Source of the DNA: Anolis carolinensis
Taxonomy: Eukaryota
Reading direction: 5' to 3'
DNA length: 64,000 nucleotides
NCBI RefSeq assembly: GCF_035594765.1
Contig: NC_085841.1
Span: 71,223,574 to 71,287,573 of the forward strand
Shown here: positions 12,736 to 60,269 of the stretch, in pieces
Layout: each line of letters begins with the position of its first letter
How positions within the stretch are numbered: the first letter of the stretch is position 1
Translations under genes and position numbers: made by a program
The notes under the pieces: generated by a model
What the model was told of the DNA's origin: nothing
The model's database searches: none
Seen by the model: the letters and a program-made list of their open reading frames with translations, nothing else

Positions 12736-13707
12736 ATGATTGAGACAAACTCCTTGCCTACTCAGACTCTCAATGTAACAAAGATGAATGAGACCCAAAA
12801 GTGGAATGAAACTAATAGAGATGCTGATTTCTTTAAAATATTGGTCTATACTATTGCCCCTATCACCATTTTGGGCTTAATCGGCAATGGAACTATTTTC
12901 TGGTTTCTCTGTTGTAGAATCAAAAGAACTAAATATACTGTGTATGTCCTGAATCTTGCAATTGCTGATTTCACGGTACTCTTTTCATTTAATGTATTTT
13001 TTGTCTTCAGCTTTATCATGCAGGACAAATTTGCTTTTAATGACATTTTCTATCTTGTATTAGATATTTTGGGTATCTTTGGCTACAATACCAGTTTCTT
13101 CATTTTGACCGCCATTAGTGTCGAGAGATGCCTTGGTGCTTTTTATCCAATCTGCTACCACTTTAATCGCCCCAAACGCCTCTCAACCATATTATGTGCT
13201 CTTCTATGGGTTCTCTCCTGTGTGGTGACTGGAATGGAATATTTCACCTGCTGGTCATACACAGACATATTTGATGATCCAGCTTACAGAATGTATCTTA
13301 CTACAAGCATATTCCTTACCATAGTTTTCTTGTTATTTAGTCCAACTATGGTCCTTTGCAGTGTCAGCATGTTTATTAAGATACGAAGAAATTCACGGCC
13401 ATCATCTCAAACCCGACTTTATCTCATCATTGTTATCACCGTCATTCTGTTCCTCTTCTTTGCTTTGCCCTTTAGGTTAATGTGTCTGTTTATCTATTGG
13501 TATCCAACAGCAGAGATTGAATGGTTTGTCTTTCATTGTTCTGTGTTCCTCCACTTAATCAACAGCAGTGTTGATCCTTTTGTTTACTTTCTTGTTGGGA
13601 GGCGGAGGCCCCGCGAGACACTCTATAAAGTGCTTTATAGATCCTGCAAGGATCAGGAGGAGGAGCCAGTTCCAAAAAACCTAAGCAATGAGCAGGAAGA
13701 AAGCTGA
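12736..13707 (+). CDS. Mas-related GPCR, copy 1 (most canonical MAS/MRGPR-like), about 323 aa
   Basis: 7 hydrophobic segments; GLIGN, YVLNLAIADF, LTAISVERCL..YP..Y..RPKRLS, RLY, FALP, INSSVDPFVYF. Acceptor TTTTACAG at 12698, first ATG after it at 12736; N-terminal sequons NVT, NET, NET. Confidence 0.95.
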   Translation: MIETNSLPTQTLNVTKMNETQKWNETNRDADFFKILVYTIAPITILGLIGNGTIFWFLCCRIKRTKYTVYVLNLAIADFTVLFSFNVFFVFSFIMQDKFAFNDIFYLVLDILGIFGYNTSFFILTAISVERCLGAFYPICYHFNRPKRLSTILCALLWVLSCVVTGMEYFTCWSYTDIFDDPAYRMYLTTSIFLTIVFLLFSPTMVLCSVSMFIKIRRNSRPSSQTRLYLIIVITVILFLFFALPFRLMCLFIYWYPTAEIEWFVFHCSVFLHLINSSVDPFVYFLVGRRRPRETLYKVLYRSCKDQEEEPVPKNLSNEQEES

Positions 13708-14240
13708 AATCTATCATTTCAATTTAAAAAATCCATATATCTATCTCATGGATAGATATTTAGTGTGGTGTTCTTGTTTGCTTTGTACATCTGTTCTCCA
13801 GCTTGCTATGCTAAGAACCTGATGTTCTCTTCCTAGTTTTCTTCAGTTATCATGACACATTGTTCTTAGATTTTAAAGACAGATTCACCATTATGAAAAC
13901 AAAATATTAAATGCTGCAGTGGACAGTTCTGTACAATAAATATAGTATTGATACTTCATCTTGTACCTGTACAGTGTTTTCCGCAATTAGAACAAGGAAC
14001 CTTGTACACCTTCTAAACCAACACGGCTCTAAATTGGTTCATCTCCCTAGTCAGTGAAGGATGCTCAAATACAGCATAGCATCTCTTTATCTATTTCTGC
14101 AAGAAAAAGTAAAAGTAACTGAAACATTAGGACAGGCTTGAGATAAGAAAATTTCCAAAAGGGTTTTTAGCAATGGTTCTTCTTATCTTTTGTTCAGTGT
14201 GCTATTCTTACAGTTCCTAATGTATAGTTTTTAGCTATCT

Positions 14241-14390
14241 CAGACATGGGCAAACTTGGGCCCTCCAGGTGTTTTGGACTTCAACTCCCGCTTAAGTGGC
14301 TGAGCGGGAAAAGAAAGGGGCCTAAGGCTGTTAGGAATGGTGGGAGTTGAAATCCAAAACACCTGGAGGGCCCAAGTTTGCCCATGCCTG
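14241..14390. mobile_element. hAT MITE (CAGGCATGGGCAAACT family)
   Basis: Long TIRs; related copies at about 45655-45788 and 53914-54123. Confidence 0.85.
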
Positions 14391-14899
14391 AGATAGCTAG
14401 ATATGTTATATATTGTCTTCATATACTTCCTTCTGTGACATTCTAATAACTCATATTAAGATAATGAGGCTGGAGAGTGTGTTGGGAGATTTTGTATTTA
14501 TTTTGTATTCAATTAACCATGCTGTATATTTCACCCTTGTTTAATATATGATAATATTCCACGTATTAATTTGCCATTGCCTCTGTGCTTATCATATTAC
14601 AATTTTAGGTGTTACAGTTTAAACATAATCCTATGATTTCAATATATTCTTCACTGTTTTTATGATTTGCTGTGACTTTTCACCATTTTGTGTTATATTT
14701 CAATAAATGCTATGTAGCTTTTAATTCTGGTTTAGTTGGTTCATAAACGCACTGAAGCAAAACAAATTCATGGGGATCTTTCATTCAACACTATTGTCTA
14801 CCAAATAGGTCTATTTACATCCATCTATTACTGATTCCAGGCACCCATTCATGTAGGGGGCAATCATCCCTAATACGGAAGAGGGAAAATACAGTCTTT

Positions 14900-15032
14900 G
14901 TGTTGTCGAAAGCTTTCATGACTGGGATCACAGAATTGTTGTGTGTTTTCAGGGCAATATGGCCATGTTTCAGAAGTATTCTCTCCTGATGTTTCACCCA
15001 CATCTATGGCAGGCATTCTCAGAGGTTGTGAG
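14900..15032 (-). mobile_element. Penelope-like terminal fragment
   Basis: Homology to the other Penelope fragments; hammerhead core mutated to CTGAGAA. Confidence 0.7.
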
Positions 15033-15404
15033 GCAAACACAGGTGACACAGGATAACCTTATAATTAGTTTAATGGAAGATCACTGGAAGCACAGGCACT
15101 CTAGAACAGAGCAGAAGAAGAAAATGTGGACAAGAAAGAACTGCGTTCTTAGTATAATGTCAGACTAGAATTTCAGTAATAGTGACTCCATCCCATTCAG
15201 GAATTCCAAGAAGAAACTGGAGTTGATGACATTAAAAGCTGCTTAGATAATCAGAACAATCAACAAGAGCACATCTTCCCTTCCTTTTTCCAATACAGGT
15301 CACCAATAAGGCCGATCAAGTCAGCACCCTTTCAAAAATACAGAAGCAAGATAAATTAAAAAGGATTCAGATCAGAGTAATGATAGTGCTTCACTGCACT
15401 ACAA

Positions 15405-16525: not shown

Positions 16526-16533
16526 ATCTAAAT

Positions 16534-17152
16534 CATTGTTTCTCAACCTGGGGGTTGGGACCCCTGGGGGAGTCATGAGGGGGGTTCAGAGGGGTTGCCA
16601 AAGATGGGGGTTCTGCGTGGGAAGTTTGGCCCAATTTGATTGTTGGTGGGGTTCAAGGGGCTCTTTGATTGTATTGTGAACTATAAATCCCAGCAACTAC
16701 AACTCCCAAATGTCAAGGTCTATTTTCACCAAACTCCACCAGTGTTCAAATTTGGGCATATTGAGCATGTGGCCAACTCGATGTGGCCCACCAAACCCTT
16801 CCAGTATTTCCTGTTGATCATGGGAGTTCTATGTGCCACGTTTGGTTCAATTCCATTGTTGGTGGAGTTCCGAATGCTCTTTGATTGTAGGTGAACTATA
16901 AATCCCAGCAACTACAACTCCCAAATGACAAAATCATCCCCCCTCCCCCCAACCCTACTAGTATTCAAATTTGGGTGTATCGGGTATTTGTGCCAAATTT
17001 GGTCCAGTGAATAAAAATACATCCTGCATATCAGATATTAACATTACAATTCATAACAGTACCAAGATGACAGTTATGAAGTAGTTGGGGGCCACTACAA
17101 CATGAGGAACTGTATTAAGGGGTCGCGGCATTTGGAAGGTTGAGAACCACTG
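16534..17152. mobile_element. SPIN-like hAT non-autonomous element
   Basis: TIR CAGTGGTTCTCAACCT; URR1/SPIN-type end; inverted relative to the copy at 62162; TSD ATCTAAAT/ATCGAAAG. Confidence 0.85.
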
Positions 17153-17251
17153 ATCGAAAGCATCCAAGAGATAGGAGTTACAGCTAGTAATGAAACTGTG
17201 TTTGATATTGGCAGGTTCAGAAGAATTACTGAACAGCTTGATAGCCTCAAG

Positions 17252-18208
17252 ATGGCAGAGGCATACTCCTTATCATTCCACACTGTTGCGGGTGCCCAAA
17301 ACACTGGGACTCAAATGGAGACTGGCTACCAGTTGCAAAAAACGATTATGATTGTATCAATTCCAATCTGCACATTAGGATTACTTGGTAATGCAGTTGT
17401 CGTCTGGCTTCTGTGGTGCTTCATCCCGAAAACTAATTTCACTGTGTATTTCCTCAATAAGGCAGTTGCTGATCTTGCTGTACTCATCTACTACATAACA
17501 GTTTTCATTTTATTTGTGAAGGAAGTTCCCATGAACCTGTTCAGTTTACATATCATGGAGCTGGCACATGGCTTTGGGTTCAATGCAAGCACTTATATCC
17601 TAACAGCTATCAGTGCTGAGAGGTTCCTCATGGCCTTTTCACCAACATGGTATAAGCTGAATCGGCCCACCCATCTCTCCGAAATCATGTGTGCCCTTTT
17701 ATGGAGCTTGTCCTGCCTGGTGACTGTGACGTTATATTTTGCCTGCTATCTGCAACTTGATCCATTACTCACTGAAGTTAATTCGATTTGTGAGCCTACA
17801 AAAATGGCCCGAGCAATTGTCAACCTCCTGGTGTTTCTCCCTATCATGGTCCTGTCCACATTGCTCCTTTTGGTCAGAATGTTGAATACACCGCAGGGAA
17901 GCGCTCCAGAAAAAATTGACATCACCATTGTGGCCACCGTTTTGCTATTTCTTCTCTTTGCTGCCTCAGTTAGGATCATTGATATTATAGTCCACTGGGT
18001 CCCCCAAATACACATATCTGTGGTCTTCCTAATATTTCATTTTCTCGATGCTATTGACAGCAGTGGGAACCCTTTTATATATTTCTGTGTTGGCTATACA
18101 AAGAATCAGGTTGACAGTGGCAGCCCCACCCAAACATTTCTTCAGAGGGCTTTCTTGGACGATGAAAACAGGTCAAGAAATGCAAGCTATGCCCCAAGAA
18201 GAAGATGA
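17252..18208 (+). CDS. Mas-related GPCR, copy 2, about 318 aa
   Basis: GLLGN, YFLNKAVADL, LTAISAERFL..P.WY..RPTHLS, SSGNPFIYF; acceptor TTGGCAG at 17214; AATAAA near 18276. Confidence 0.93.
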   Translation: MAEAYSLSFHTVAGAQNTGTQMETGYQLQKTIMIVSIPICTLGLLGNAVVVWLLWCFIPKTNFTVYFLNKAVADLAVLIYYITVFILFVKEVPMNLFSLHIMELAHGFGFNASTYILTAISAERFLMAFSPTWYKLNRPTHLSEIMCALLWSLSCLVTVTLYFACYLQLDPLLTEVNSICEPTKMARAIVNLLVFLPIMVLSTLLLLVRMLNTPQGSAPEKIDITIVATVLLFLLFAASVRIIDIIVHWVPQIHISVVFLIFHFLDAIDSSGNPFIYFCVGYTKNQVDSGSPTQTFLQRAFLDDENRSRNASYAPRRR

Positions 18209-18342
18209 AAGAGGATTTATACACAGATGGAAAAAGTACATACATGTGACTGTTAGTTGGCATTCCTGTCTTTTAAATAAACACATTGTAGATACTTTGT
18301 TGCTGTTCATTACTTCTAATTTATCTATCTAAACCACTATAC

Positions 18343-18472
18343 CAGGGGTCCCCAAACTAAGGCCCGGGGGCCGGATGCGGCCCATCGAAGCCATTTATCC
18401 GGCCCCTACAGCACAAGGGCAGAAGGGGGTTGGGCTAAATGGCCCAAGGGGTCTCTTCTTCTCTTACAACAC

Positions 18473-18503
<31 letters not shown>

Positions 18504-18625
18504 CATTATTATTAACATTGAGGCTGGGAGGCCATCTGTCAGGGTTGTTTTGCTTGTGCTTTGGATGCACAAAGGCAGAAGGGGGCTGGACTCAGTGGCC
18601 CAAGGGCTCTCTTCCAACCCTCTTT

Positions 18626-18667
<42 letters not shown>

Positions 18668-18840
18668 ATCAAGGCTGTATTTGTTCCCGTTTTGTTTGTT
18701 TTTTTACTTCAAAATGAGGCATGTGCAGAGTGCATAGGAATTTGTTCATAGTTTTTTAAAAAAAAAAACTCTAGCCCGGCCCTCCAACTGTCTGAGGGAC
18801 CGTGGACTGGCCCCCTGTTTAAAAAGTTTGGGGACCCCTG
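18343..18840. mobile_element. OC1-like hAT MITE with internal (TTA)n and (TTG)n
   Basis: TIR CAGGGGTCCCCAAACT; perfect TSD CACTATAC. Confidence 0.9.
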
Positions 18841-20249
18841 CACTATACCATCGTTTAGGTAGAGTTGTCTATCCAGACAAAGCAAATGTTGTTGGAGGTT
18901 GCAATATTCATAGCTGTCGTTCTTGGATTGTTAAAATATAATCAGACAATATTTTGGATGTCCTGGAATATTCAGTGGCAATTCCTGGCACCAGCAGCAA
19001 CATTTTATTTCTACCCAGAAGGTGTTGGGAGTTTTTTACACACACAGGACCATCGACGGGCGGGTGGCGGGCGAAGCAAGGGAGAGCAGGAGGGCGGCCG
19101 TGCGGACAGGTGGCTGGGCCTTCCGCCGCCGCTGCCTTGACAGCGCCCACACATGGTCTGCGCCACAAGCGACAGCTTAATTGGCCTTAATGTTGGACCG
19201 CCTCTGCTTCCTTTTTACTATGGATGGAAGGGTCAAAGAGGGAGCAATTGTTAGCAGAGAAGTGTCATTGCATTTATATATTTGGGTTTAAGATTACTGG
19301 TCCTTTAAAAAGAAGGCATGCCCATACTGGATCTGACAACATACAGAGACAATAGGTCTGGAAGGTATCAAATGTACTGAACAGATCTGAATGAAGACTG
19401 GCCATGTTTCCTACAATTATGGCTTCCTTCAGTCCCAACCCCCCCCCCCCAACCCCACCCCCAGCCATCAGCTTTTATAAGGATTTTTAAAAGTTATTAT
19501 TGTTTTTTTAATTGCTATTATTTATATCCCTCTTTTTCTCTCTAAAAAGAGACCTAAAGTGATGCTGTGAAAGAGCTTAGAGAGGGGAGGTGGGCAAAGA
19601 AAACAACTGACAGCCTCCAAAAGTAGTTAAAGGGGCTTTATGCTCACTTTGGGGGCAAGGAGGGAAGGGTGGCATGGCCATCCCACCTCCCTGGCCTGCC
19701 TAAGCCCCAGGAGCATAAGATGGTTGTGGGGACACCAATCTGGGATCACAGGTAGTGTGTCTGCTTGCACAGCCTAACATGAGGTAAATTGCATTAAAAA
19801 GGTGTACCATGTGTTATTTCACATTAGCCTGGGTTTGGACACCCCATGCTAATGTGATACCTACACTGCATTTTCTTACGGTGCAGATGGGCCTGGAATC
19901 TCAACAGCTTTGTGATAAGGAAGAACAAGAAAACAATGCTAATCATCATCAAGGAAAGTTCCAATTTGGGGGGGGGGGGGAGAGAGAAGTAGGGCAGCAG
20001 CAGCACCATGTGGAATCTCCATGGCGGGTCAGGAATCATCACTCCTCTCAGCACTCCCATTTTATGCAGACATTCCAGAAGGATACTATGGCTGTTGCTG
20101 AACAGGAAATGCTCAGAGAACCAAGAATCTTAACACTATCACACATAGAGATGATCTGTCTACTAGGCAGATCATGCCTGGTCCCACCCAGGGAGCCAGA
20201 GAGAAAACAGATCAATATTACTTTAAACTCATGCTGTGCATTCCCAAAC

Positions 20250-20330
20250 TGCCAATAACAGTGGCTGGGTGGTCAGAAGATTCTCATATTCCATTTGTTA
20301 CCTAGGAACACACGATCATTGTGAAGTCAA
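20250..20330 (+). promoter_or_regulatory. Conserved upstream module of GPCR copy 3
   Basis: GGTCA ending at 20275 and GTTACCTAGGAAC at 20297, same spacing as for copies 2 and 4. Confidence 0.6.
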
Positions 20331-21457
20331 GTGGTTCATACCTTTCTGATATGAAGGACAGCAGAATGACCAGATCCACTTGAAATGCAACTGAAGAGGA
20401 ATCATGACGGTTGTATTTAATCTTATACTGGATCTTAGTTTTATTCGCTTAAAGCTCATATTTAAGATTATATAATTTTGTTAACAAAAAACAAAGAAAA
20501 CACTTAAAGTAACCAGATACCATATGACTACATGTCTAATGAAGAAACAGGTTGGCACTTGCCAGAGTGATAACACAGTAGGCCCTTGGTGTCTACCAGG
20601 GCTGACCCCAGGGCCCCATGGATAGCAAATTCTGTGGATGTTCAAGGTCCATTTATACTATGGTATAGTGAAATGATATCGCTTATATAAAATGGCAAAA
20701 TCAAAATTTGCTTTGTCTACTTTGTTTGGAATATTTTAAGCCATGAAGGATTAAATCTGTGGACATAGAATCTGTAGAAAATAGTGGGAAGGAGACTTTT
20801 TCCCTTCCAAAGAAACATTTTCTCCAACTACTGAGTAGACCATTGCCTCTTCTGATGATTGGTGGCTGTGCAATTGAACGGCAGTGGAAGGAATAGAGAG
20901 AAATTACAGAAGATACGAACAGACCAGAACTCTGAATTAACTAGAGTCAAGTCTAGTGATTTATTTATTATTTATTTATTTACATCATTTCTATCCCGTC
21001 TTTCTCACCCGTAGGGACTCAAGGCGGCTTACTAGTCTGGCAAAAATTCAATGCCAATACAAACAACAATACAATAAAACATAAAACAGTTGAGTTGACT
21101 TGAGTGTTAGTTAGACTATGACTGTGAAAAATGATTCCCGAGTTCACAATCTTTTGTGGAGCCATGCGTCATTTTAATCCTCTTTTGAAAGAGGAAATGA
21201 ATAGAAGATAACAGCCTGTTTTAAAAGGTGGGGCTTCTCTTGGGTTTTTAAATGGCTTAAAATAACTCAAAGGGGGATAACTTTGGAAAGTTGTGCCCTT
21301 GCCTTCTACAAAGTATTTGTGGTCATTTTGCGGATATTTTTTTAAAGGAGAGCATACATGGATATAAGTGTGTAACCCTCAGTCTCCCAAGGGACCAATA
21401 TGGCACCCTCGCCTTCCCATTCCTGTTCTAAAACCCTAAAACACATATGTTCTAGAG

Positions 21458-21588
21458 CAGTGGTTCTCAAACTGTGGGTCCCCAGATGTTTTGGTCAACT
21501 CCCAGAAATCCTATCAGCTGGTAAACTGACTGGGATTTCTGGGAGTTGTAGGCCAAAACACCTGGGACCCGCAAGTTAAGAACCACTG
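21458..21588. mobile_element. hAT MITE
   Basis: TIR CAGTGGTTCT; TSD TTCTAGAG/ATCTAGAG. Confidence 0.85.
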
Positions 21589-21779
21589 ATCTAGAGAGAC
21601 AATTAATTCCAAGTCATTTTTTCCTAAGCAGCAGCTATGAGAGTGGGATGTTACAGCACAAATGTCTTTGCCTGACAGGTGGTCTTGGATTTTCTGTCTC
21701 TATTCCACAATACGATGTTATAATAGTAACACATTATGTTTGATTTTTGGCAGATTGAGAAGAACAATTGGACATTGTC

Positions 21780-22799
21780 ATGATGACAGACTCACCTGCT
21801 TTGTTTTCTGAGACTGCTGCTCTGATTAAAAAAAATTTCACACAACTCGAAACTTGGCCAAAGAAAGGCTATTTCCTGGGATCAAAGAAAAGCTATTTCC
21901 TAGAAACAATTGTCTTTGTATCTATCCCAATCTGCATTTGGGGATTCCTTGGGAATGGAATTACCCTCTGGATTCTCTGCACCAAGACAAAGAAAACTAG
22001 GTTCACAATTTATGTCATCAATTTGGTCATTGCGGATCTTATTGTGATCATCTACTACCTTACTGTTTTCATTTTATTTTTGGTATCAACTAATGTGGAT
22101 TTGTATTTTTCACGTGTAATGGAGAATTTTTATTTAATAAGCTACAATGCTAGTATCTATTTTTTTACTGCTATGAGTACTGAAAGGTTCCTCATGGTCT
22201 TTATGCCAGTCTGTTACTATCATCATCGACCAAAGCATATGTCAGTAATTGTGTCCGTCATTTTGTGGGCCTTGTCCTGCATAGTGTCACTTGTGGTATA
22301 TATTTCATGCCTCCCGAGATTCCTTGTATCTCATCATCAAAGTGGCCCCTCTTGTGATGGTGCAATTATTTTTAAAATTTTTGTCAATATCTTGATTTTC
22401 TTTCCCATCATGATATTTTGTACTCTGTCGCTTTTTATACGAATGCAGAGAAAAGCAAAGTTGAGAGATTCTGAGAAACTTGATGTCACCATCACAGCCA
22501 TCACCATTCTGTACCTTTCATTTGTTGTTTCAGTTAGAATTGTTGATGCCATAGCCCACTGGGAGCCAAGACTTGATGCACCAGTCCCATTTCTATTTAC
22601 TTTGTTATTCGATTCCATCAAGAGCACTGTCACCCCTCTTGTGTATGTCTGTGTTGGATGCTGTCATCAGTTTACGACTGTAGCACCTATTCATCAGTTC
22701 CTTGCGAGAGCTCTGGAATATAAAATAAAAGGGAGCAAAGATCAGGCAGCTAGCAAAAAACCTAGTTCCAGAGTAACTTGGGCCCCAGAAGTAAGATGA
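21780..22799 (+). CDS. Mas-related GPCR, copy 3, about 339 aa
   Basis: GFLGN, YVINLVIADL, TAMSTERFL..P..Y..RPKHMS, TPLVY; acceptor at 21753; AATAAA near 22846. Confidence 0.93.
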   Translation: MMTDSPALFSETAALIKKNFTQLETWPKKGYFLGSKKSYFLETIVFVSIPICIWGFLGNGITLWILCTKTKKTRFTIYVINLVIADLIVIIYYLTVFILFLVSTNVDLYFSRVMENFYLISYNASIYFFTAMSTERFLMVFMPVCYYHHRPKHMSVIVSVILWALSCIVSLVVYISCLPRFLVSHHQSGPSCDGAIIFKIFVNILIFFPIMIFCTLSLFIRMQRKAKLRDSEKLDVTITAITILYLSFVVSVRIVDAIAHWEPRLDAPVPFLFTLLFDSIKSTVTPLVYVCVGCCHQFTTVAPIHQFLARALEYKIKGSKDQAASKKPSSRVTWAPEVR

Positions 22800-24209
22800 A
22801 AAACACTCTGAACTACAAATACTGGCTAGCATTTTCCATTTCCAGAATAAAAAGTATTGCAGTTCATGTTATTAATCATTATTTCTAGGCTGCTTCATTC
22901 ACCTAAGCTCCTACATAAGATCAATTATAAATCCTTTTCAGGGCAATCATTATAGTAGAATGAGGTACTACTTTACAAATCTTGCAAATTTACTTTTAAG
23001 AAGAATAAATATAATAATATGCCAAAATTATATATAACTGAGCAAGGATAAGACCACAATTTTTTGGGAATGACAATGAAGTGACTTCCACAGCCAGTGC
23101 GTTCATTGCTGCTAAATTCTAAGAGATGTAATCTAAAAAGTAACGTTTCCAGATTTTGGGTAGGATGATGCTCTAGGTGCCAAAGTATTATTCTGCCACT
23201 GATCAGTTATGAATAGTTTATTACAAGTTTGTAGTCATTCTTTCTAAAATTAACTGCATAAACTCTATAGTTTTGTAAGATTAAATACAGATGAAAGGTG
23301 TGAGCATACTCAAAGGATAAAGGACAACTAGAAAGCAACCACAATAAGAATGACTACTTTGACATTGCTCATATTGCTTTGCTAACAATAAAAACGGACT
23401 TCAATCTGGCTATCTTTAAGTGTCTGCCTCCGTTGCAGATTTTATTTATTTTCTAAAATCTAATCAGGGACTAGCTCTCTCAGTAGATGGGCATAACTGT
23501 TATCCCTAGACTGTTTGTAATGTTGCAAGGCCTGAGAGAGAGAATGACAGAGGAAAGAAAGGAACAGAGAAGAAAAACCAGTTGCCTTGTGTCTCTGGCT
23601 GGATCTGCACTGCCATATAGTGCAGTTTCAGAATACAGATTAACTGCATTGAACTGGATTTTATGACAGTTTATATTTATATAATCAAGTTCAATACAAT
23701 TTAATCTGCATTACGTGAGTCTACACTGAACATAGTTAAAACTGCATTATATGGCAGTTTAGATGGGGCCTCTGATATCTTATCTGGATAGGTTTGGGTT
23801 TCTTTCAAAAGACCAGGCCTGCAGCTTGATGGTGCTCTTGGACCTAGCAATGGTTCTTGAAGGTTAGACGACTGGTGTGGCCAGGAGTGTTTTCATGGGA
23901 TTTCAGCTGCTGTTTTAAATGTACTACTTCCAAAGAAGATAGATTTGGCCATAGTGATCCACGCATTAATTGCCTTCCATCTTTCAAAAGAAGCATTCAC
24001 CTTCAGATGCATCCGACAGCCCTTTCGCACAACACAATGGCAGCAACATGATTTCATTTTAATGGCCATGGCTGTTTCGTTTGGAATCCTGTGATTGCTA
24101 GTTTCATGAAATTTTAGAATCCTCTTCCAGAAAGCCCCTATGCATCACTAAACTACAAATCCCTAGATCCACTGGATGAAGCCATGACAGTTGAAGTAGC
24201 ATCAAAGTG

Positions 24210-25714: not shown

Positions 25715-25852
25715 AATCCAGCTAACAATTGCTGTGAGGTCATGAAGTTCTCAGATTCCCTTTGTTACATAGGAAACACACTATCATAGTGAAGGAACAC
25801 ATATCTTCAAAGAAGATAGTCCTGAGTGTAGAATACAGTTAACAAGGTAAGA
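25715..25852 (+). promoter_or_regulatory. Conserved upstream module and probable non-coding first exon of GPCR copy 4
   Basis: TGAGGTCA at 25735, GTTACATAGGAAAC at 25764, consensus donor AAG|GTAAGA at 25846. Confidence 0.65.
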
Positions 25853-28864: not shown

Positions 28865-29507
28865 TAAACCTAATTATAATTAGGATATATCTGTTATAAT
28901 AGTTGGGATGTAAGTTAGTCATGATTCACTTAGCTACACTGATTTAAAATGATCTCCCCTATATATGACTAAATCTGCATCCAAACCAATGTCTCATTCA
29001 TAAGGTAATCATGAGGAATTTTGAATTCAGTATATACTAATCACATTCATCTACACCCCTCCCCAATACAATTTACAAGTTAGATAAAGTAAAAAAAATA
29101 ACACCTGGAATTATTTACCTAAGATGGTATGCCTTTCTTAGATGAGACACTTCCAGAAGTAGAGTTATCTTTTTACTAAAAAAAAAAAAAAAGTATTGGG
29201 GGAGTAGTCTTAAGTGTGCCTTGGGGGCTTTAACCATAGGATGTCCACTTCTGCTTTAAATGGAAGTTGAAAGAATGTTCCGGTAGTGGTCATTCTGGCC
29301 CATCCAGCCAACAGAATATATGAATGCTAGGTTAGCCTTTCTTGCTCAAATGTTTGAGTTTAATGTTACTAAAGGACAGTCCCCACCTGATGGGTATCTG
29401 TTTTGAATATTTCTAATTTTTATTCCAACAGCTAAATGCCATAATAATGACAGATTATGTCTGTTTTTTACAGTTGGAGAATTACTGAACCCGTTGCTCG
29501 TGGCAAG

Positions 29508-30434
29508 ATGGTAAAGGCTGCTTTGTCTTTTCCGGTTCCTGATATGTTTAGACAATCTCAATATGACCTCTCTTGGCAAGAGAAAATCATGATTTCATGG
29601 ATGCCATTTGCAATCTTGGGATTTATAGGAAATGGAATTGTTACCTATTTTTTCTGGCACAGGCAAAAACGTTCTAGGTTTTTTCTGTATTTCCAGAATA
29701 TCACTATAGCTAATTTTTCAGTACTCATCTATGTATTTGTATATTTTCATAGGCTTTTTTTACGGTTAAGAATCAAGAACTTTTTTGAACACATTGTGCA
29801 GACACTGCAGTTATTGGGAAACAACACCAGATTCTATCTCTTAGCAGCCACTTGTGTTGAAAGATGGTTTCTTGTCTATCGCCCAGTGTGGGTTAAACAT
29901 CGGAGGCCACAGTACACATCAGCCGTGGTGGTTAGCATTTTATGGATTGTGGCCAGCATTACATCCATGGTGGATCATTTGGCCTGCTCTCCAGCATTCT
30001 TCATAACCACTTTTGAATATGAACTCTACTGCATGTCTTTTACTGTCATCAGGATAATTCTTGAGTTAGGACTTCTCATCGCCATTGTCTTTTGCTCTGC
30101 AGCCATTTTGAAGAGAAGTCTAACACAGTCAATGCCACCAGAAAGGCTTGATGTCACCATTTTAGCCACAGTCCTTCTGTATCTTACAACTGACACACCT
30201 GATAGAATTGCTTATGAGATTTCTATTTGGTTTGATGACATGGATATATTTGCGTTAATTTTATTTACTCAGTTATTTGACACCATCAACTGTGCTGTTA
30301 TTCCATTTATATTTTTCATTGTTGGATGTTGGAAGAAGCCCTCGGATGAGCCAGTCAGCCTGTTTCTTGAAAGAGCTCTGATGTTTGAAGAAAACAGGGT
30401 AGAAGGAACACCAGTACAAGAAGAGCAGGCCTGA
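29508..30434 (+). CDS. Mas-related GPCR, copy 4 (atypical motifs), about 308 aa
   Basis: GFIGN, YFQNITIANF, CVERWF..RP.W..RRPQY, IPFIFF; acceptor TTTTACAG at 29473; ORF intact. Confidence 0.9.
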   Translation: MVKAALSFPVPDMFRQSQYDLSWQEKIMISWMPFAILGFIGNGIVTYFFWHRQKRSRFFLYFQNITIANFSVLIYVFVYFHRLFLRLRIKNFFEHIVQTLQLLGNNTRFYLLAATCVERWFLVYRPVWVKHRRPQYTSAVVVSILWIVASITSMVDHLACSPAFFITTFEYELYCMSFTVIRIILELGLLIAIVFCSAAILKRSLTQSMPPERLDVTILATVLLYLTTDTPDRIAYEISIWFDDMDIFALILFTQLFDTINCAVIPFIFFIVGCWKKPSDEPVSLFLERALMFEENRVEGTPVQEEQA

Positions 30435-43321: not shown

Positions 43322-43390
43322 CAACAGCTAACAATTGCCATGAGGTCATAAGATTCCACTTGTTACATAGGAATCATATTAGTGAAGTTG
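43322..43390 (+). promoter_or_regulatory. Conserved upstream module of GPCR copy 5
   Basis: CAGCTAACAATTGC, TGAGGTCA at 43341, GTTACATAGGAATC at 43362. Confidence 0.6.
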
Positions 43391-45400: not shown

Positions 45401-46129
45401 TGTGCAAATTTGAAATATTGTACACATAAATGGTGATACATCAGAGAAAGTAATTGGCAGCAGAAAGAGAAAGAAAGACAAAGTGATACAGAAGCAGAGA
45501 AGTTCATTCACCACCAGCCCTAATTCTGTCCATCTGAATGATTTTTCTTCTCAGCCAACGGCACTTCATAGGGAAAAGAGGGCACCAAATTTGAAGGAAT
45601 ACTGAACAAAACACCAAATAATTCAGGGTTTATTATCAGTTTCACAGTCTAGCATAGGCATGGGCAAACTTAGGCTCTCCAGGTGTTTTGGACTTCAACT
45701 CCCACAATTCCTAACAGCTGACTGGCTGTTTGGAATGGTGAGAGTTGAAGTACAAAACACTTGGTGGGCCGAAGTTTGCTGATGCCTGGTCTAGCAGTTG
45801 TTACCAGTTGAAATTTCGGACCATCAATGATTCCAATTCTATCCAAGAATCTAGTTAATGTGGCACTTTCCAAGAAGTTCCACTTTTTGTAATTGTGCTG
45901 CTGTTGCATTTATATCTCTCTGTTTCTAAAGTCTGGAACTTAAGATGACGGAAGTTAAAACACATATAACTAATATAATGTACAAAAATTAAAAACAGAC
46001 TCTTTCCCATCTTTGTGAATATTATACCACAAAACACATGCTCCTCTAGAAAGTTTCAACCTCCTCTTAAAACATGTTAATATCACAATAACAAAAAGTA
46101 TGTTTGATTTTGGCAGGTTGACAAAGATT

Positions 46130-47062
46130 ATGGAACATATGAACAGCACCATAGCGACAGAAGTTTCTTCTCTTCAGGATGAAAGGAAACCAGGCAAACC
46201 TGTTGATGTTCCACGTAGCTTACAAACAAGGATACTGTTCACATCTTCTCCAGTCTGCCTCTTCGGGCTGTTACTAAATTTACTCATTATATGGCTTTAC
46301 TGCTGTAAAATCAAAAAGACTAAATTAACTCTATATTTTCTTAATATGGCCATTGCTGATCTTATCATAATCTTCTTAAATGTTACCATTATTATTGCAT
46401 ATTTTACACCCCTAAATCCCAGCTTAAAGGTTCGACGGATATTGCAAATTCTGCATGTATGTGCATTTGATACCACCTTCTTTTTTAAGGCAACGATCTC
46501 TGTAGAACGGTACATCTTTCTTAAGTGGCCATTTTGGTATAATCACTACCGGCCCAACAATTTCTCTGTCATTATAAGTATTAGTTTATGGGGTTTGTCC
46601 TGTGTAGTATCATTTGTGACCTATTACGGCTGTTATCCAAGATTCGATGTCAGCGTCAACACACTTCTTAACAACTGCAGAGCTGCCAATGCAATTGAAA
46701 TAATCATTGAGTTGATCATTTTCCTTCCCAGCATGATCATCTGCACTTTTGCCCTTTGGATCAGAATGCAAACTCCTGTATCAAGACTGGATGTTTCCAT
46801 TGTGGGTTTGGTTCTTATATGTCTTATCATTAATGCCCCAGTTAGAATTACTCAAATCACTTCCTCTTGGGATTATAATGTAGATAGGTATGTGCTAGGC
46901 AAGATTTCTCTCTTACTAGACTCTGTCGACAGTGCTAGCAACCCTATCGTGTTCCTTATTGTTGGTTGTAAAAAGAACCAGAAGGCAATCCTGTTTCTTG
47001 AGACTGCTCTGGATGAAGGAAACACAACAGAGAAAACACAATCCAGCGAAGTATATGCCTGA
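46130..47062 (+). CDS. Mas-related GPCR, copy 5, about 310 aa
   Basis: YFLNMAIADL, TISVERYI..WPFWY..RPNNFS, NAPVR, SASNPIVF; acceptor at 46116; AATAAA near 47134. Confidence 0.93.
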   Translation: MEHMNSTIATEVSSLQDERKPGKPVDVPRSLQTRILFTSSPVCLFGLLLNLLIIWLYCCKIKKTKLTLYFLNMAIADLIIIFLNVTIIIAYFTPLNPSLKVRRILQILHVCAFDTTFFFKATISVERYIFLKWPFWYNHYRPNNFSVIISISLWGLSCVVSFVTYYGCYPRFDVSVNTLLNNCRAANAIEIIIELIIFLPSMIICTFALWIRMQTPVSRLDVSIVGLVLICLIINAPVRITQITSSWDYNVDRYVLGKISLLLDSVDSASNPIVFLIVGCKKNQKAILFLETALDEGNTTEKTQSSEVYA

Positions 47063-49982: not shown

Positions 49983-50028
<46 letters not shown>

Positions 50029-51501: not shown

Positions 51502-51543
<42 letters not shown>

Positions 51544-58250: not shown

Positions 58251-58300
58251 CTAACATATGTAATGCATAGGTGTGAAAATACATACATACATATTCACAA

Positions 58301-59213
58301 CTAGCGTATATACCCTGGGTTTGCATATGCTTGGTGGCTGTTTCTTACCTTCTTTTCTTTCCCTCATATACTTTGTCCCTCTCTTGTTTCTTACCTTTCC
58401 TCACTTTTGCTCATACACCATCACCTCTCTTCTTTCTTTCCATTCTCTGCTTTCCTTTCTCTTCCCTTGTTTTTCTTCTTCTCTCACTTTTGTCGCATTT
58501 ATTGTTCTTTCCTGCCTTCCTTCCTCTCAAATCTTTTCCCATTTTTTCTCTTTCCTCCTCCTCCCTTCTTTTTATCTTTTCTCCCTCGGATTCTGTTTTC
58601 TTTTCTCTTTCCTTCATTTTCTTTCTTCCTTCACTTCTTTTTACCTTTCCTCCTTCCTTCTTATTTTTTTCTTTCCTATTTTCTAACTTTTCCGATTTTT
58701 CCTTCCTTCCTTCCTCATTCTTTTTCTTTCTCCCCCACCTCTATTTCTTTTCTTGTCTCTTTCTTTCTTCTTTTCTTACTGACTTCCTTTCCCTCATACA
58801 CCTTTCCTACTTTTCTTACTTTCTTCCCCTTCTGTCTCCCTTTTCATGTCTGCCATCTGGCTGTTTTCTCCCTTCTCTACCTTGCTTCCGTGTTTGCTTG
58901 GCCCTTTGAAAAGGCCTCCCTCACAATGTCTCCATGGTAATGCTCTGGCCCTCCAAGTGGCTCGTAGTGTGTCCTTACTGACTCTCTAGCACACTTTCTT
59001 TTCTTACTTCTCTCTCTAAGGTAGCCTATCTATACATTGTATTAGTTTTGGTGGCCCTGGCCCCAAAAGGGGCAAATTTTTTATTATCTTAGGTTGGAAA
59101 ATCAAGGCTATATGTACCAAGTTTGGTCCAGATCCATCAAGCCATGTGGGAACCTTTGTGGTGCAAACCAACAAATATACATACGTACACATTTTTATTT
59201 ATATTTATGTAGA
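58301..59213 (-). mobile_element. Helitron-like element carrying a roughly 650-bp polypyrimidine tract
   Basis: CTAG at 58301, TC-TACATAAATATAAA 5' end on the minus strand, CCAAGTTTGG block as in the 11 kb Helitrons; hairpin unclear. Confidence 0.5.
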
Positions 59214-59375
59214 ACTTAGTAATGCCTTGTTGTGTTTGATTTTGGCAGGTTCAGAAGATTTACTGGGCACATGAACAATCTCATGCTGGCACAGATAAGA
59301 TACATATTTCCCATCATTTGTTGATGCTGTGAACAAAAATGACGCAGATGTGGGGCATCCTGCATTTCTAAAGCA

Positions 59376-60269
59376 ATGATAATTGTAGCTATTCCAATCT
59401 GCATTGTGGGATTAGTTGGGAATGCATTAGTTTTCTACTTTCTTTCCTTTAAGATCAAGAAGACAAAGTTCACTATGTATATACTGAATATTACTGTCGG
59501 TGATACTCTTGTTCTGGTCTATCAATATATATATTTCATGCTATTTTTGCAACCAATTCAACTTAGTGGACCCATCTCACATTTTCTAGAGTTAATGTAT
59601 GTTTTTGGAGACAACTCTAGCTTCTTTGCATTAACAATTGTTTGTCTTGAAAGGTGTTTCTCAGTCTTTCCCCCTATCATCCGTCGATTTAAACGTCCAA
59701 AGCATCTTGCAGTTTATATTTCTATTGCATTGTGGATCTTCTCTGGCCTGGTATCCATAATTGAATATTATGCATGCAGACCAAGATTCTATGCATATCT
59801 GGAGGAAGATAGTCACCACTGCTATGTTCAAACGATAGTCAAAATTGTCATTGGGTACGCAATTTTCATTCCCCTCATGGTCTTTTCCACTCTGGCCATT
59901 TTTATCAGAATGCTACAAAAAAGACTAGAAAGCATTCCTGCGGTGTTCGATTTTACCATCATAGCTGTAGTTATTCTTTTTCTTGTATTTCAAGCTTCAA
60001 TTAGAATTTTCAGTACTCTAGAATACTGGTATGATTCAATAGGCCTACCTCTCTTTACAATATCTGTCTTATTTGATACTATATCAAGCAGCATCAACCC
60101 TTTTTTATATTTTTTCATGGGATATTTCACTTACGGAAAACGTTATCCACTCGAAGTTCTTCTTCGGACTGCTTTGCAGGAGGAAAGCAATACGATAAAT
60201 AGCACGGTAAATAACACGGTAAATAACACGGAAAATAGCATGGAAAATAGCACAGAAAATAGCACGTAA
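59376..60269 (+). CDS. Mas-related GPCR, copy 6 (297 aa; N-terminus disrupted, possible incipient pseudogene)
   Basis: GLVGN, YILNITVGD, CLERCF..PP..RPKHLA, SSSINPFLYF; acceptor at 59248; upstream in-frame ATG 59271 is separated by two TGA codons. Confidence 0.85.
   Translation: MIIVAIPICIVGLVGNALVFYFLSFKIKKTKFTMYILNITVGDTLVLVYQYIYFMLFLQPIQLSGPISHFLELMYVFGDNSSFFALTIVCLERCFSVFPPIIRRFKRPKHLAVYISIALWIFSGLVSIIEYYACRPRFYAYLEEDSHHCYVQTIVKIVIGYAIFIPLMVFSTLAIFIRMLQKRLESIPAVFDFTIIAVVILFLVFQASIRIFSTLEYWYDSIGLPLFTISVLFDTISSSINPFLYFFMGYFTYGKRYPLEVLLRTALQEESNTINSTVNNTVNNTENSMENSTENST
60198..60269 (+). repeat. Coding 12-bp tandem repeat, 6 units
   Basis: Consensus AATAGCACGGAA encodes NSTV NNTV NNTE NSME NSTE NST*. 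Confidence 0.95.

What the first reader, a model, noticed from the sequence alone, without database searches (positions are those of the whole stretch)
12736..60269. Tandem array of six deeply diverged Mas-related GPCRs in a squamate: candidate lineage-specific sensory or immune receptor family
Seen: six same-strand 7TM ORFs, each behind a homologous acceptor (TGTTTGATTTTGGCAG or TGTCTGTTTTTACAG). They are very diverged from each other, yet the 7TM cores are all open while every neighbouring TE ORF is broken. Known: mammalian MRGPRs form independently expanded clusters for itch, nociception and mast-cell sensing. Inference: old duplicates kept by selection, possibly a reptile radiation with its own ligands.
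Basis: partly seen in the sequence, partly recalled or inferred. Interest (0 to 1): 0.8.

Follow-up and report, generated by a model that had tools for sequence, protein, structure and literature searches.

The report
Squamate Mas-receptor gene cluster
The window holds the green anole's MAS1 locus, where one Mas gene plus five old, squamate-only Mas-like receptor genes sit in a row; they are real, kept by selection and at least two are transcribed, but most are already annotated, their function is unknown, and the cluster is a new subfamily of a known receptor family, not a new kind of thing.

Summary
There are six intact same-strand 7TM ORFs (R1-R6, 297-339 aa, 26-38% identical to each other). 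Each follows a homologous splice acceptor, and nearby transposon ORFs are fragments. All six belong to the MAS/MRGPR family.

The genome is Anolis carolinensis. The same six-gene order occurs in A. sagrei, followed by a CAF1-domain (PNLDC1-like) gene, so this is the MAS1 locus.

- **Ancestry:** R1 is the squamate Mas gene. R2-R6 fall in a squamate-only clade (support 100/99), and each has orthologues in other squamates. A clade joining them to mammalian MRGPRH is rejected (AU p 0.02).
- **Selection:** Against A. sagrei, coding sequence has 7 indels in 5.3 kb (6 in frame), while non-coding DNA has 311 in 22 kb. dN/dS is nevertheless high (0.3-1.3).
- **Transcription:** RNA-like public contigs confirm splicing at the R3 acceptor (GT..AG intron) and transcription of R2 and R3. 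The tissue is unknown.
- **Oddities:** R6-type receptors start at TM1. The R4/R5 lineage has N at 2.50 and R4 lacks NPxxY. R1 diverges almost only in its extracellular half.

Most of these genes are already annotated as 'Mas-like', and a 2019 GPCR survey noted the reptile cluster. The sensory or immune role is untested. Interest is moderate.

The parts
12684..12698 (+). R1 splice-acceptor motif TGTCTGTTTTTACAG; the coding exon would begin at 12699
   Evidence: It is homologous to the acceptors of the other five genes. It was not tested with RNA.
12736..13707 (+). R1 coding sequence, 323 aa: the squamate Mas (MAS1-type) receptor
   Evidence: Best solved relative is human MAS1, E 3e-58. Orthologues occur in geckos, lacertids, anguimorphs, iguanians and snakes at 46-83% identity. 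The R1 clade has support 100/98. The second Cys of the TM4-TM5 pair is lost. Against A. sagrei, dN/dS is 1.43 in the extracellular half and 0.16 in the intracellular half.
17199..17214 (+). R2 splice-acceptor motif TGTTTGATATTGGCAG
   Evidence: A 1207-nt contig of run X4 lies on 17214-18294 from its letter 127 onward, so 126 nt of other sequence join exactly here.
17252..18208 (+). R2 coding sequence, 318 aa: the best-conserved member of the squamate-only clade
   Evidence: MAS1 E 5e-40. Orthologues are 60-88% identical across Squamata and the clade has support 100/100. dN/dS against A. sagrei is 0.33-0.47. Exon-only contigs occur in runs X4 and X9. The AlphaFold model has pLDDT 85, and its best folds are MRGPRX1, MAS1 and MRGPRD.
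20305..20408 (+). R3 non-coding 5' exon, itself preceded by an acceptor-like TTTGTTACCTAG
   Evidence: An X9 contig of 1121 nt joins 20305-20408 to 21753-22713, skipping 1344 nt with GT..AG ends. The element is conserved upstream of R4 and R5.
21737..21753 (+). R3 splice-acceptor motif TGTTTGATTTTTGGCAG
   Evidence: It is used in the spliced X9 contig. An in-frame TGA at 21756-21758 shows the leader is non-coding.
21780..22799 (+). R3 coding sequence, 339 aa
   Evidence: Orthologue identities: A. sagrei 75%, Sceloporus 67%, Pogona 57%, Rhineura 51%, snakes 40-44%. Clade support is 99/99. dN/dS is 0.86-1.3 against A. sagrei and 0.34-0.5 against Phrynocephalus. It is covered by contigs of X4 and X9.
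25754..25775 (+). Element upstream of R4 that is homologous to the acceptor and start of R3's 5' exon
   Evidence: GATTCCnTTTGTTACnTAGGAA has three matches in the window and none in 100 shuffles. A 47-nt stretch is 87% identical to the R3 exon region. No RNA evidence.
29458..29473 (+). R4 splice-acceptor motif TGTCTGTTTTTTACAG
   Evidence: Not tested with RNA.
29508..30434 (+). R4 coding sequence, 308 aa: an atypical member with N at 2.50 and IPFIF in place of NPxxY
   Evidence: MAS1 E 2e-25. Pfam 7tm_1 scores 19.8 bits, below the cut-off. Orthologues were found only in Iguania: A. sagrei 78%, Pogona twice at 45-47%, Phrynocephalus twice at about 44%. Clade support is 100/100. Motif losses are shared by the clade. 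dN/dS is 0.8-1.2 against A. sagrei and 0.45-0.6 against Phrynocephalus.
43352..43373 (+). Element upstream of R5 that is homologous to the acceptor and start of R3's 5' exon
   Evidence: one mismatch. No RNA evidence.
46101..46116 (+). R5 splice-acceptor motif TGTTTGATTTTGGCAG
   Evidence: Not tested with RNA.
46130..47062 (+). R5 coding sequence, 310 aa; no identical protein record was found for this species
   Evidence: It is not in the 15-billion-protein collection under three possible starts. Exhaustive phmmer gives Varanus komodoensis Mas-like as best hit, 48%, E 2e-74. Its clade with Lacerta, Rhineura, Varanus and Laticauda has support 100/94 and is sister to R4. A. sagrei has a called 321-aa gene at the same position, 81% identical over the 169 aa available. 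dN/dS is 0.64-0.87 on the C-terminal half.
59233..59248 (+). R6 splice-acceptor motif TGTTTGATTTTGGCAG
   Evidence: With its leader it is 35 of 37 nt identical to R2's. Not tested with RNA.
59249..59375 (+). R6 leader: a fossil of the former N-terminal coding region, in the receptor's frame but closed by two TGA codons, with five upstream ATGs
   Evidence: The same stretch is also closed in A. sagrei and Phrynocephalus.
59376..60269 (+). R6 coding sequence, 297 aa: the receptor begins at TM1 (N1.50 is residue 16); the C-tail is an N/S/T-rich repeat
   Evidence: MAS1 E 7e-34. Orthologues in A. sagrei, Pogona, Phrynocephalus, Elgaria, Varanus and vipers all start at the same Met with no N-terminal segment. 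Clade support is 100/96. dN/dS is about 1.0-1.3 against A. sagrei (inflated by the tail) and 0.25-0.37 against Phrynocephalus.

Best explanation
This is the MAS1 locus of the green anole. It holds six functional genes for class A GPCRs of the MAS/MRGPR family. R1 is the squamate Mas gene. R2-R6 are members of a squamate-only subfamily that arose by tandem duplication at this locus. Most of that duplication happened before the main lizard and snake lineages split.

Each gene has non-coding 5' exon(s) spliced to a conserved acceptor a few tens of bases upstream of the start codon, and a single coding exon.

By inference from solved MAS1 and MRGPR structures, the proteins bind ligands in the extracellular half of the helix bundle and signal through G proteins. 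The paralogues have been kept for different, still unknown ligands or roles:
- R2 is conserved throughout.
- R1 keeps its G-protein side but changes its pocket quickly.
- R6 works without an N-terminal segment.
- R4 has lost two activation motifs and may signal atypically or not at all.

Shown here: family membership, orthology pattern, synteny, frame conservation, and splicing and transcription of R2 and R3. Inferred: signalling, ligand diversity, and any sensory or immune role.
For: - **Family:** (Pfam 7tm_1; MAS1 and MRGPRs as best solved relatives). The R2 model has pLDDT 85 and matches MRGPRX1, MAS1, MRGPRD and MRGPRX2 at TM 0.81-0.87. N1.50, ERx, W4.50, the TM4-TM5 Cys pair and the absence of W6.48 are shared with mammalian MAS1/MRGPRs.
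- **Species and orthologues:**
- **Tree:** sauropsid clade 99/99; R1 clade 100/98; squamate-only R2-R6 clade 100/99; each paralogue clade 94-100. The R2-R6 plus MRGPRH clade is rejected (dlnL 40, AU 0.021).
- **Synteny:** A. sagrei has R1-R6 in the same order within 48 kb, then a CAF1-domain gene on the other strand. Phrynocephalus has R3, R4, R4b ... R6, then the CAF1 gene. Crotalus has R2, R3 and an R5-like gene; Eublepharis has R1 and then two paralogues. Mas1, Mrgprh and Pnldc1 are listed together in the mouse Igf2r cluster (PMC4666383). MAS1 lies next to PNLDC1/MRPL18 in goose (PMC12990418).
- **Selection:** 7 indels in 5262 coding nt (6 multiples of three) against 311 in 22043 non-coding nt (248 not multiples of three). 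About 59 frame-breaking indels are expected and 1 is seen. The chance of no stop under neutral substitution is 0.7-10% per full-length gene. Long-term dN/dS is 0.25-0.6.
- **Transcription and splicing:**
Against: - Within Anolis, dN/dS is close to 1 for R3, R4 and R6, and 0.6-0.95 for R1 and R5. Taken alone, that would fit relaxed constraint.
- R4 lacks D2.50 and NPxxY and scores below the Pfam cut-off.
- R6 has five upstream ATGs and no N-terminus.
- R5 has no matching protein record for this species.
- RNA evidence covers only R2 and R3, comes from assembled contigs of runs whose type is guessed, and gives no tissue.
- No tuatara, turtle, crocodilian or chicken sequences were in the tree. 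'Squamate-only' therefore rests on what the searches returned. One unnamed Logan protein (P0129) sits at the base of the clade.
- The AU values (0.021 and 0.034) are only moderately strong.
Confidence: 0.8

Rival explanations
1. R2-R6 are not a squamate novelty. They are co-orthologues of mammalian MRGPRH, which sits at the same Mas1-Pnldc1 locus in mouse. On this reading the duplication of Mas and an MRGPRH-like gene predates the split of mammals and reptiles.
For: Mrgprh is listed with Mas1 and Pnldc1 in the mouse Igf2r cluster (PMC4666383). RefSeq names several R2 and R6 orthologues 'MRGPRH-like'. PMC6504862 left this possibility open. R2-R6 keep the TM4-TM5 Cys pair as MRGPRH does, whereas R1 and kiwi Mas-like have lost the second Cys. 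The alternative grouping of kiwi with R1 is only weakly rejected (AU 0.034).
Against: The tree unites kiwi, R1 and R2-R6 at 99/99, apart from all mammalian and amphibian sequences. Forcing R2-R6 together with MRGPRH costs 40 log-likelihood units, AU p 0.021.
Confidence: 0.12
2. Some copies (R3, R4, R6, perhaps R5) are no longer working receptors in Anolis. They would be open by inertia or kept for a non-signalling role, such as a decoy or scavenger, or a transcript-level function.
For: dN/dS against A. sagrei is 0.8-1.3 for R3, R4 and R6, with no difference between extracellular and intracellular halves in R3 and R4. R4 has N2.50 and IPFIF and scores below the Pfam cut-off. R6 has a closed former N-terminus and five upstream ATGs. 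R5 has no protein record for this species.
Against: Coding indels are ten times rarer than in flanks and nearly all are in frame. Both anoles keep all six frames open, although neutral substitution alone would close most of them. Orthologues remain open in distant squamates. dN/dS against Phrynocephalus is 0.25-0.6. R3 is transcribed and spliced. The R4 motif changes and the R6 truncation are shared by whole clades, so they are old and tolerated.
Confidence: 0.15
3. The array is an artefact: chance ORFs, recent assembly duplicates, or processed pseudogenes scattered among transposons.
For: The region is rich in transposon fragments and very high-copy repeats flank the genes.
Against: The copies are only 26-38% identical. 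The same order is found in an independent A. sagrei assembly. Introns and acceptors are present and used. All copies hit MAS1 at E of 2e-25 or better where tested.
Confidence: 0.01

Closest known systems
MAS1 (proto-oncogene Mas), human and mouse
   Same: MAS1 is the best solved relative of every copy tested. The locus matches, lying next to a PNLDC1-like gene (PMC4666383, PMC12990418). The genes have a single coding exon behind non-coding 5' exons. The proteins share a short N-terminus, ERC-type motif, no W6.48 and NPxxY. R1 is the member closest to it, at 40% identity to a mammalian MAS1.
   Different: Mammals have one MAS1. Squamates have R1 plus four to five further paralogues at the locus. 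R1 has lost the second Cys of the TM4-TM5 pair and evolves fast in its extracellular half. Orthology of R1 to mammalian MAS1 rests on similarity and synteny; the tree does not resolve it.
Mammalian MRGPRX / MrgprA-B-C clusters (primate and rodent itch, nociception and mast-cell receptors)
   Same: These are tandem, lineage-specific expansions of the same family. They have single coding exons and evolve fast with high dN/dS. They share the shallow-pocket architecture implied by the tiny ECL2 and the TM4-TM5 Cys pair.
   Different: They occupy a different branch of the family and, to my knowledge, a different locus (human 11p15). The mammalian expansions are young, whereas the squamate paralogues are old and mostly have single-copy orthologues across lizards and snakes. 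No ligand, cell type or phenotype is known for the squamate genes.
MRGPRH (rodents, marsupials)
   Same: It is a neighbour of Mas1 at the same locus in mouse (PMC4666383). It is an orphan receptor. It is the name RefSeq gives several R2 and R6 orthologues.
   Different: A clade of R2-R6 with MRGPRH is rejected (AU 0.021). Identity is only about 30-33%.
Second A. carolinensis MRGPR cluster noted earlier in this scan (s1-528575)
   Same: Same genome, same family, and a conserved acceptor just upstream of the main exon.
   Different: In that cluster a small upstream exon is reported to supply the start codon. Here the start codons lie in the main exon. R3 has an in-frame stop 2 nt after the acceptor, and the start Mets are conserved in orthologues.

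Membership tests
MAS/MRGPR family of class A GPCRs | Seven-helix rhodopsin-type fold | tested here: met
   Pfam 7tm_1 is above the cut-off for five of the six ORFs; R4 scores 19.8 bits against a 30.5 cut-off. The R2 AlphaFold model shows seven helices plus helix 8, with pLDDT 85 and pTM 0.84.
MAS/MRGPR family of class A GPCRs | Closer in sequence and fold to MAS1/MRGPRs than to any other GPCR group | tested here: met
   For R1, R2, R4 and R6, phmmer against PDB puts MAS1 first and then MRGPRX1/X2/X4/D/E. The next group (C3aR, C5aR) is 10-25 orders of magnitude weaker. Foldseek with the R2 model gives ranks 1-22 all to MRGPR or MAS1 entries. R3 and R5 are placed by the tree.
MAS/MRGPR family of class A GPCRs | Family-typical motif pattern: a Cys pair at the TM4 end and TM5 start, no Trp at 6.48, a very short ECL2, and ERx at 3.49-3.51. 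That these features define the family comes from my knowledge of the MRGPRX2/X4 structures. | tested here: met
   The alignment includes mammalian MAS1, MRGPRH, MRGPRD and MRGPRX2-like sequences. Both Cys are present in R2-R6, but the second is lost in R1. No W is present in the TM6 motif of any copy. ER[CFWY] is present in all six. ECL2 is 5 residues in the R2 model.
MAS/MRGPR family of class A GPCRs | Single coding exon with non-coding 5' exon(s) | tested here: met
   For R3, a spliced RNA-like contig shows GT..AG ends, and an in-frame stop right after the acceptor shows the leader is non-coding. For R2, a contig breaks exactly at the acceptor. For R1, R4, R5 and R6 this is inferred from the homologous acceptors only.
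MAS/MRGPR family of class A GPCRs | Ligand-activated G-protein signalling | not testable with these tools
   This needs expression and assay. R4 lacks D2.50 and NPxxY and R5's relatives lack D2.50, which raises doubt for that lineage.
MAS/MRGPR family of class A GPCRs | Expression in sensory neurons or mast and other immune cells (typical of MRGPRs, though not a defining feature of MAS1) | not testable with these tools
   The runs that hold R2 and R3 transcripts are coded, so tissue is unknown.
MAS1 orthologue (applies to R1) | Position at the IGF2R-MAS1-PNLDC1 locus | tested here: met
   A CAF1-domain gene of 529-530 aa lies on the opposite strand 4-5 kb beyond R6 in A. sagrei and Phrynocephalus. 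Adjacency of MAS1 and PNLDC1 in mouse and goose is taken from PMC4666383 and PMC12990418. That the CAF1 gene is PNLDC1 is inferred from domain and length. The window itself ends before it. IGF2R was not looked for.
MAS1 orthologue (applies to R1) | Groups with mammalian MAS1 in a tree | tested here: inconclusive
   R1 is the copy most similar to MAS1. In the tree, however, mammalian MAS1 sits in an unresolved set with amphibian genes and MRGPRH, outside the sauropsid clade.
MRGPRH orthologues (considered for R2-R6) | Form a clade with mammalian MRGPRH | tested here: not met
   The free tree separates them (99/99). The constrained tree is 40 log-likelihood units worse, AU p 0.021.
Pseudogenes | Frame-breaking mutations, or neutral indel and substitution patterns | tested here: not met
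   All six frames are open in A. carolinensis. In A. sagrei five full frames plus the available 3' part of R5 are open. There is 1 non-triplet indel in 5262 coding nt against 248 in 22043 non-coding nt. The former N-terminal region of R6 is broken, but the truncated frame is conserved. dN/dS near 1 within Anolis for R3, R4 and R6 stays unexplained.

The most novel reading that the evidence does not exclude
R2-R6 are a squamate-specific orphan receptor subfamily with its own ligands and specialised members. R2 would be a conserved-ligand receptor. R6 would be a receptor that has worked without any extracellular N-terminus since the common ancestor of iguanians, anguimorphs and snakes. The R4/R5 lineage has given up the sodium-site Asp, and R4 also NPxxY, so it may act as an atypical or decoy receptor. 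The Mas gene proper (R1) would be tracking fast-changing ligands through adaptive change confined to its pocket. If so, squamates built their itch, nociception or innate-sensing MRGPR repertoire from the MAS1 locus, independently of mammals.
Probability: 0.3. Interest if true: 0.6.

Novelty: new member of a known kind. Interest (0 to 1): 0.4.

Why it matters
MRGPRs are the textbook case of lineage-specific receptor expansions for itch, pain and mast-cell activation, and almost all that is known comes from primates and rodents. This locus shows that lizards and snakes made a separate, much older expansion from the Mas locus itself, and kept the copies in order for a very long time. That gives a second, independent case for asking how such receptor families diversify.

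It also offers concrete oddities to test:
- a receptor with no N-terminus (R6);
- a lineage without D2.50 and, in R4, without NPxxY;
- a Mas orthologue (R1) whose pocket evolves fast while its G-protein face is frozen.

It does not change any general view. Most of the genes are already annotated, and no function is shown.

Tried and rejected
- **A. sagrei R4 and R6 look-ups.** The nr versions (P0081, P0100) were not on record. Cluster members P0259 and P0260 were, and these were used instead.
- **Varanus R5-type gene (P0120).** Not on record, so there is no synteny check for it.
- **Full A. sagrei R5.** Only its last 514 nt lie in a fetched locus, so dN/dS covers the C-terminal half only.
- **Coding upstream start exon**, as reported for another anole MRGPR cluster. 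Rejected here. R3 and R6 have in-frame stops between acceptor and start. The start Mets are conserved in orthologues. The one longer A. sagrei R2 model simply reads through the unspliced acceptor.
- **One leader exon shared by the whole cluster.** Not supported. R3 has its own 5' exon between R2 and R3, with homologous elements upstream of R4 and R5.
- **Recent gene conversion as the cause of the conserved acceptor and leader.** Unlikely, because the element is also conserved in Phrynocephalus R6.
- **Literature.** Searches for functional work on squamate Mas-like genes found only the 2019 survey. Bird and crocodile 'MRGPRH' expression notes concern genes whose relation to this clade I did not establish, so they were not used as evidence.
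- **RNA runs.** No run is on record as RNA. X1 and X11 cover intergenic DNA and were treated as DNA.
- **Spliced model.** Exons were handled by reference, and frames across the junction were reasoned from the in-frame stop.
- **Earlier scan notes.** No note lay near this place.

Full report
**What is there.**

The window contains eight ORFs of 200 aa or more. Six are on the + strand and encode 7TM proteins. I call them R1-R6. With the first ATG after the acceptor as start, the coding sequences are:

| Gene | Coding sequence | Length |
|---|---|---|
| R1 | 12736-13707 | 323 aa |
| R2 | 17252-18208 | 318 aa |
| R3 | 21780-22799 | 339 aa |
| R4 | 29508-30434 | 308 aa |
| R5 | 46130-47062 | 310 aa |
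| R6 | 59376-60269 | 297 aa |

The starts of R2, R3, R4 and R6 match the proteins on record for this contig.

All six hit Pfam 7tm_1, with R4 below the curated cut-off. R1, R2, R4 and R6 were searched against solved structures. For each the best match is human MAS1 (E 3e-58, 5e-40, 2e-25 and 7e-34), followed by MRGPRX1, X2, X4, D and E. The anaphylatoxin and formyl-peptide receptors come far behind.

The six proteins are 26-38% identical to each other. tblastn finds no further fragments of the family in the window, and there are no N runs.

An AlphaFold model of R2 (pLDDT 85, pTM 0.84) has seven helices, helix 8 and a five-residue ECL2. Its 22 best Foldseek matches are all MRGPR or MAS1 structures.

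**Acceptors and gene structure.**

Aligned, the acceptor and the first 25 nt or so of the exon are clearly homologous in all six. R2 and R6 share 35 of 37 nt there, although their proteins are 37% identical. The element is also present before Phrynocephalus R6. It is therefore conserved, and not the product of recent gene conversion.

Public runs were laid on 17050-22850.
- Two runs (X1, X11) cover intergenic DNA and behave as DNA.
- Two small runs from different studies (X4, X9) cover only the exons and behave as RNA, though their type is not on record.
- In X9, one 1121-nt contig joins 20305-20408 to 21753-22713, skipping 1344 nt with GT..AG ends. This confirms the R3 acceptor and shows a non-coding 5' exon.
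- In X4, a 1207-nt contig lies on 17214-18294 from its letter 127 onward. It therefore changes to other sequence exactly at the R2 acceptor.
- X9 also has a 1042-nt contig over the R2 coding sequence, and X4 has four contigs over R3.

The leader is non-coding. R3 has a TGA in the receptor's frame 2 nt after the acceptor, and R6 has two TGA codons in its leader. The start methionines (MAEAYSLSFHTV in R2, MMTD in R3, MVKAA/MAKAA in R4) are conserved in orthologues. That arrangement does not hold here.

The start of R3's 5' exon sits behind an acceptor-like TTTGTTACCTAG. The element GATTCCnTTTGTTACnTAGGAA recurs 3.7 kb upstream of R4 (25754) and 2.7 kb upstream of R5 (43352), with none expected by chance. 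The duplicated unit therefore included the 5' exons.

**Species, orthologues and synteny.**

R1 is 100% identical to an Anolis carolinensis UniRef entry. Orthologues by paralogue are as follows.

- **R1:** A. sagrei 83%, Sceloporus 70%, Elgaria and Varanus 58%, Pogona 55%, geckos 51-55%, snakes 46-51%. They are named 'proto-oncogene Mas(-like)'.
- **R2:** 60-88% identical across iguanians, anguimorphs, lacertids, an amphisbaenian and snakes.
- **R3:** 75% down to 40% over the same range.
- **R6:** 81% down to 49%.
- **R4:** found only in Iguania. A. sagrei is 78% identical, and Pogona and Phrynocephalus have two copies each at about 45%.
- **R5:** no identical protein record for this species. 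An exhaustive search gave a Varanus Mas-like protein as best hit (48%, E 2e-74), and then Tiliqua, Lacerta and Laticauda proteins.

In A. sagrei the six genes lie in the same order on one chromosome within 48 kb. A CAF1-domain gene of 529 aa follows on the other strand, 4.2 kb beyond R6. Phrynocephalus has R3, R4, a second R4, a 10-kb stretch I did not fetch, R6, and then the same CAF1-domain gene. Crotalus has R2, R3 and an R5-like gene in a row. The gecko Eublepharis has its R1 orthologue followed by two paralogues.

Mas1, Mrgprh and Pnldc1 are listed together in the mouse Igf2r cluster (PMC4666383). In goose a SNP lies between PNLDC1/MRPL18 and MAS1 (PMC12990418). The array is therefore the MAS1 locus. 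That the CAF1-domain gene is PNLDC1 is inferred from its domain, length and position.

**Phylogeny.**

The data set was 95 proteins, analysed with IQ-TREE under LG+C20+F+G4. Six gene models that were redundant or identical to the window were left out. Proteins shorter than 250 aa or longer than 430 aa were excluded. Supports below are ultrafast bootstrap / SH-aLRT.

| Grouping | Support |
|---|---|
| Kiwi Mas-like + R1 clade + R2-R6 clade | 99/99 |
| R1 clade | 100/98 |
| R1 and R2-R6 together, excluding kiwi | 99/96 |
| R2-R6 clade (stem 0.50) | 100/99 |
| R2 clade | 100/100 |
| R3 clade | 99/99 |
| R4+R5 clade | 100/98 |
| R5 group (Lacerta, Rhineura, Varanus, Laticauda) | 100/94 |
| R4 (Iguania) | 100/100 |
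| R4 with a Tiliqua protein as sister | 99/90 |
| R6 (iguanians, anguimorphs, vipers) | 100/96 |

Every named member of the R2-R6 clade is a squamate. Gecko sequences form their own clade of uncertain position inside the R2-R6 group. Mammalian MAS1, MRGPRH, MRGPRD, MRGPRX-like and all amphibian sequences lie outside the sauropsid clade.

Two alternatives were tested with the AU test.
- Kiwi + R1 as a clade, which would put the first duplication before the bird-lizard split: dlnL 11.9, p 0.034.
- R2-R6 + MRGPRH as a clade: dlnL 40.1, p 0.021.

Both alternatives are disfavoured, though not overwhelmingly. One character points the other way. R1 and kiwi both lack the second Cys of the TM4-TM5 pair, which R2-R6, mammals and amphibians keep.

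No tuatara, turtle, crocodilian or chicken sequence was in the set.

**Selection.**

Pairwise dN/dS against A. sagrei is shown below.

| Gene | dN/dS |
|---|---|
| R1 | 0.63-0.95 |
| R2 | 0.33-0.47 |
| R3 | 0.86-1.3 |
| R4 | 0.82-1.2 |
| R5 (C-terminal half only) | 0.64-0.87 |
| R6 | 1.0-1.3 |

dS is 0.09-0.17. Taken alone, this looks nearly neutral for several copies. The frames, however, are clearly protected.
- Aligned coding DNA (5262 nt) has 7 indels, six of them multiples of three.
- Aligned non-coding DNA (22043 nt) has 311 indels, of which 248 are not multiples of three.
- From these counts about 59 frame-breaking indels would be expected in the coding parts, and one is seen.
- Random substitution at the observed divergence leaves a full-length frame open in only 0.7-10% of trials.
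- Against Phrynocephalus, dN/dS is 0.34-0.5 (R3), 0.45-0.6 (R4) and 0.25-0.37 (R6), with dS near saturation.

By domain, using helix limits from the R2 model:
- **R1:** 43 of 150 residues differ in the extracellular half and 10 of 173 in the intracellular half (Fisher p 2e-8). dN/dS is 1.43 against 0.16. The same asymmetry holds across squamate R1 orthologues, with mean identity 0.44 against 0.72.
- **R2:** even, at 0.70 in both halves.
- **R3:** even, at 0.54 in both halves.
- **R6:** more conserved outside (0.61) than inside (0.54).

**Peculiar members.**

All R6-type proteins, from Anolis, Pogona, Phrynocephalus, Elgaria, Varanus and vipers, begin at the first residue of TM1 (N1.50 is residue 16). 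Their nearest relatives in Salvator, Tiliqua and Hemicordylus have a 32-35-residue N-terminus. In the window, the 127 nt between the acceptor and the ATG still read as a 35-codon N-terminal region in the receptor's frame. Two TGA codons close it, and it contains five ATGs. A. sagrei and Phrynocephalus are also closed there, in different ways.

The R4+R5 lineage has N instead of D at 2.50, although A. carolinensis R5 itself has D. The R4 clade has IPFIF, VPFIF, NPLIL, TLLIF and SALIL in place of NPxxY. R2, R3 and R6 lack the TM6 proline.

**What is known.**

Most of these genes and their orthologues carry automatic names ('proto-oncogene Mas-like', 'MRGPRH-like'). [quoted passage not shown] I found no functional study in the held library.

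**Verdict.**

The functional reading (sensory or immune) remains a guess. The cluster is a new, uncharacterised subfamily of a well-known receptor family at a known locus, with some unusual members worth testing.

Noticed in passing
window 60195-60266; L005 about 10720-11146: The R6 C-terminal tail is an N/S/T-rich tandem repeat (…STVNNTVNNTENSMENSTENST). In A. sagrei it is expanded to about 100 residues, which makes that protein 381 aa long. Acrodont and snake orthologues (276-279 aa) lack it. It could be a cluster of phosphorylation sites or mere repeat slippage. It inflates the intracellular dN/dS of R6.
   Followed up: partly
window 17215-17240, 21754-21775, 29474-29500, 46117-46135, 59249-59275, 12699-12720: The first 20-25 nt after each acceptor ((G)TT(C/G)AGAAGA(A/T)TTACTG(A/G)AC) are better conserved between paralogues than the coding sequence is. 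They are also conserved in Phrynocephalus R6. This suggests a splicing or translation signal in the leader.
   Followed up: partly
window 18214-18989 and 21318-21705: Very high-copy repeats (summed contig depth in the hundred thousands in the DNA-like runs) flank R2 and precede R3. Many chimeric 'joints' in the reads table come from them.
   Followed up: no
window 6846-9949 (+), 871-2199 (-), 39582-40049 (+): Decayed transposons. A gypsy-like element has its protease (7280-7990), RT (8001-8489) and an integrase piece (9548-9949) in separate ORFs. There is also a LINE-type RT fragment and a hAT-like (DUF4371) fragment.
   Followed up: partly
R1 residue aligned to R2 C180; proteins P0027, P0030: Squamate R1 and kiwi Mas-like both lack the second Cys of the TM4-TM5 pair, which every other group keeps. 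This is either a parallel loss or a hint that kiwi Mas is the orthologue of R1 alone, which the tree only weakly rejects (AU 0.034).
   Followed up: partly
protein P0129 (Logan assembly, species not named): A 308-aa protein on a long branch sits at the base of the R2-R6 clade. If it came from a non-squamate such as tuatara, it would move the age of the expansion.
   Followed up: no
window 21026-21378: A 353-nt contig of the RNA-like run X9 lies inside the R3 intron. It could be unspliced precursor, a repeat transcript or DNA carry-over.
   Followed up: no
L002 20249-20948; proteins P0083, P0085: Acrodont lizards (Phrynocephalus, Pogona) carry two R4-type genes where Anolis has one. No clear R5-type gene was seen in the parts of the Phrynocephalus locus that I fetched, but 10 kb between L002 and L003 was not read.
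   Followed up: partly
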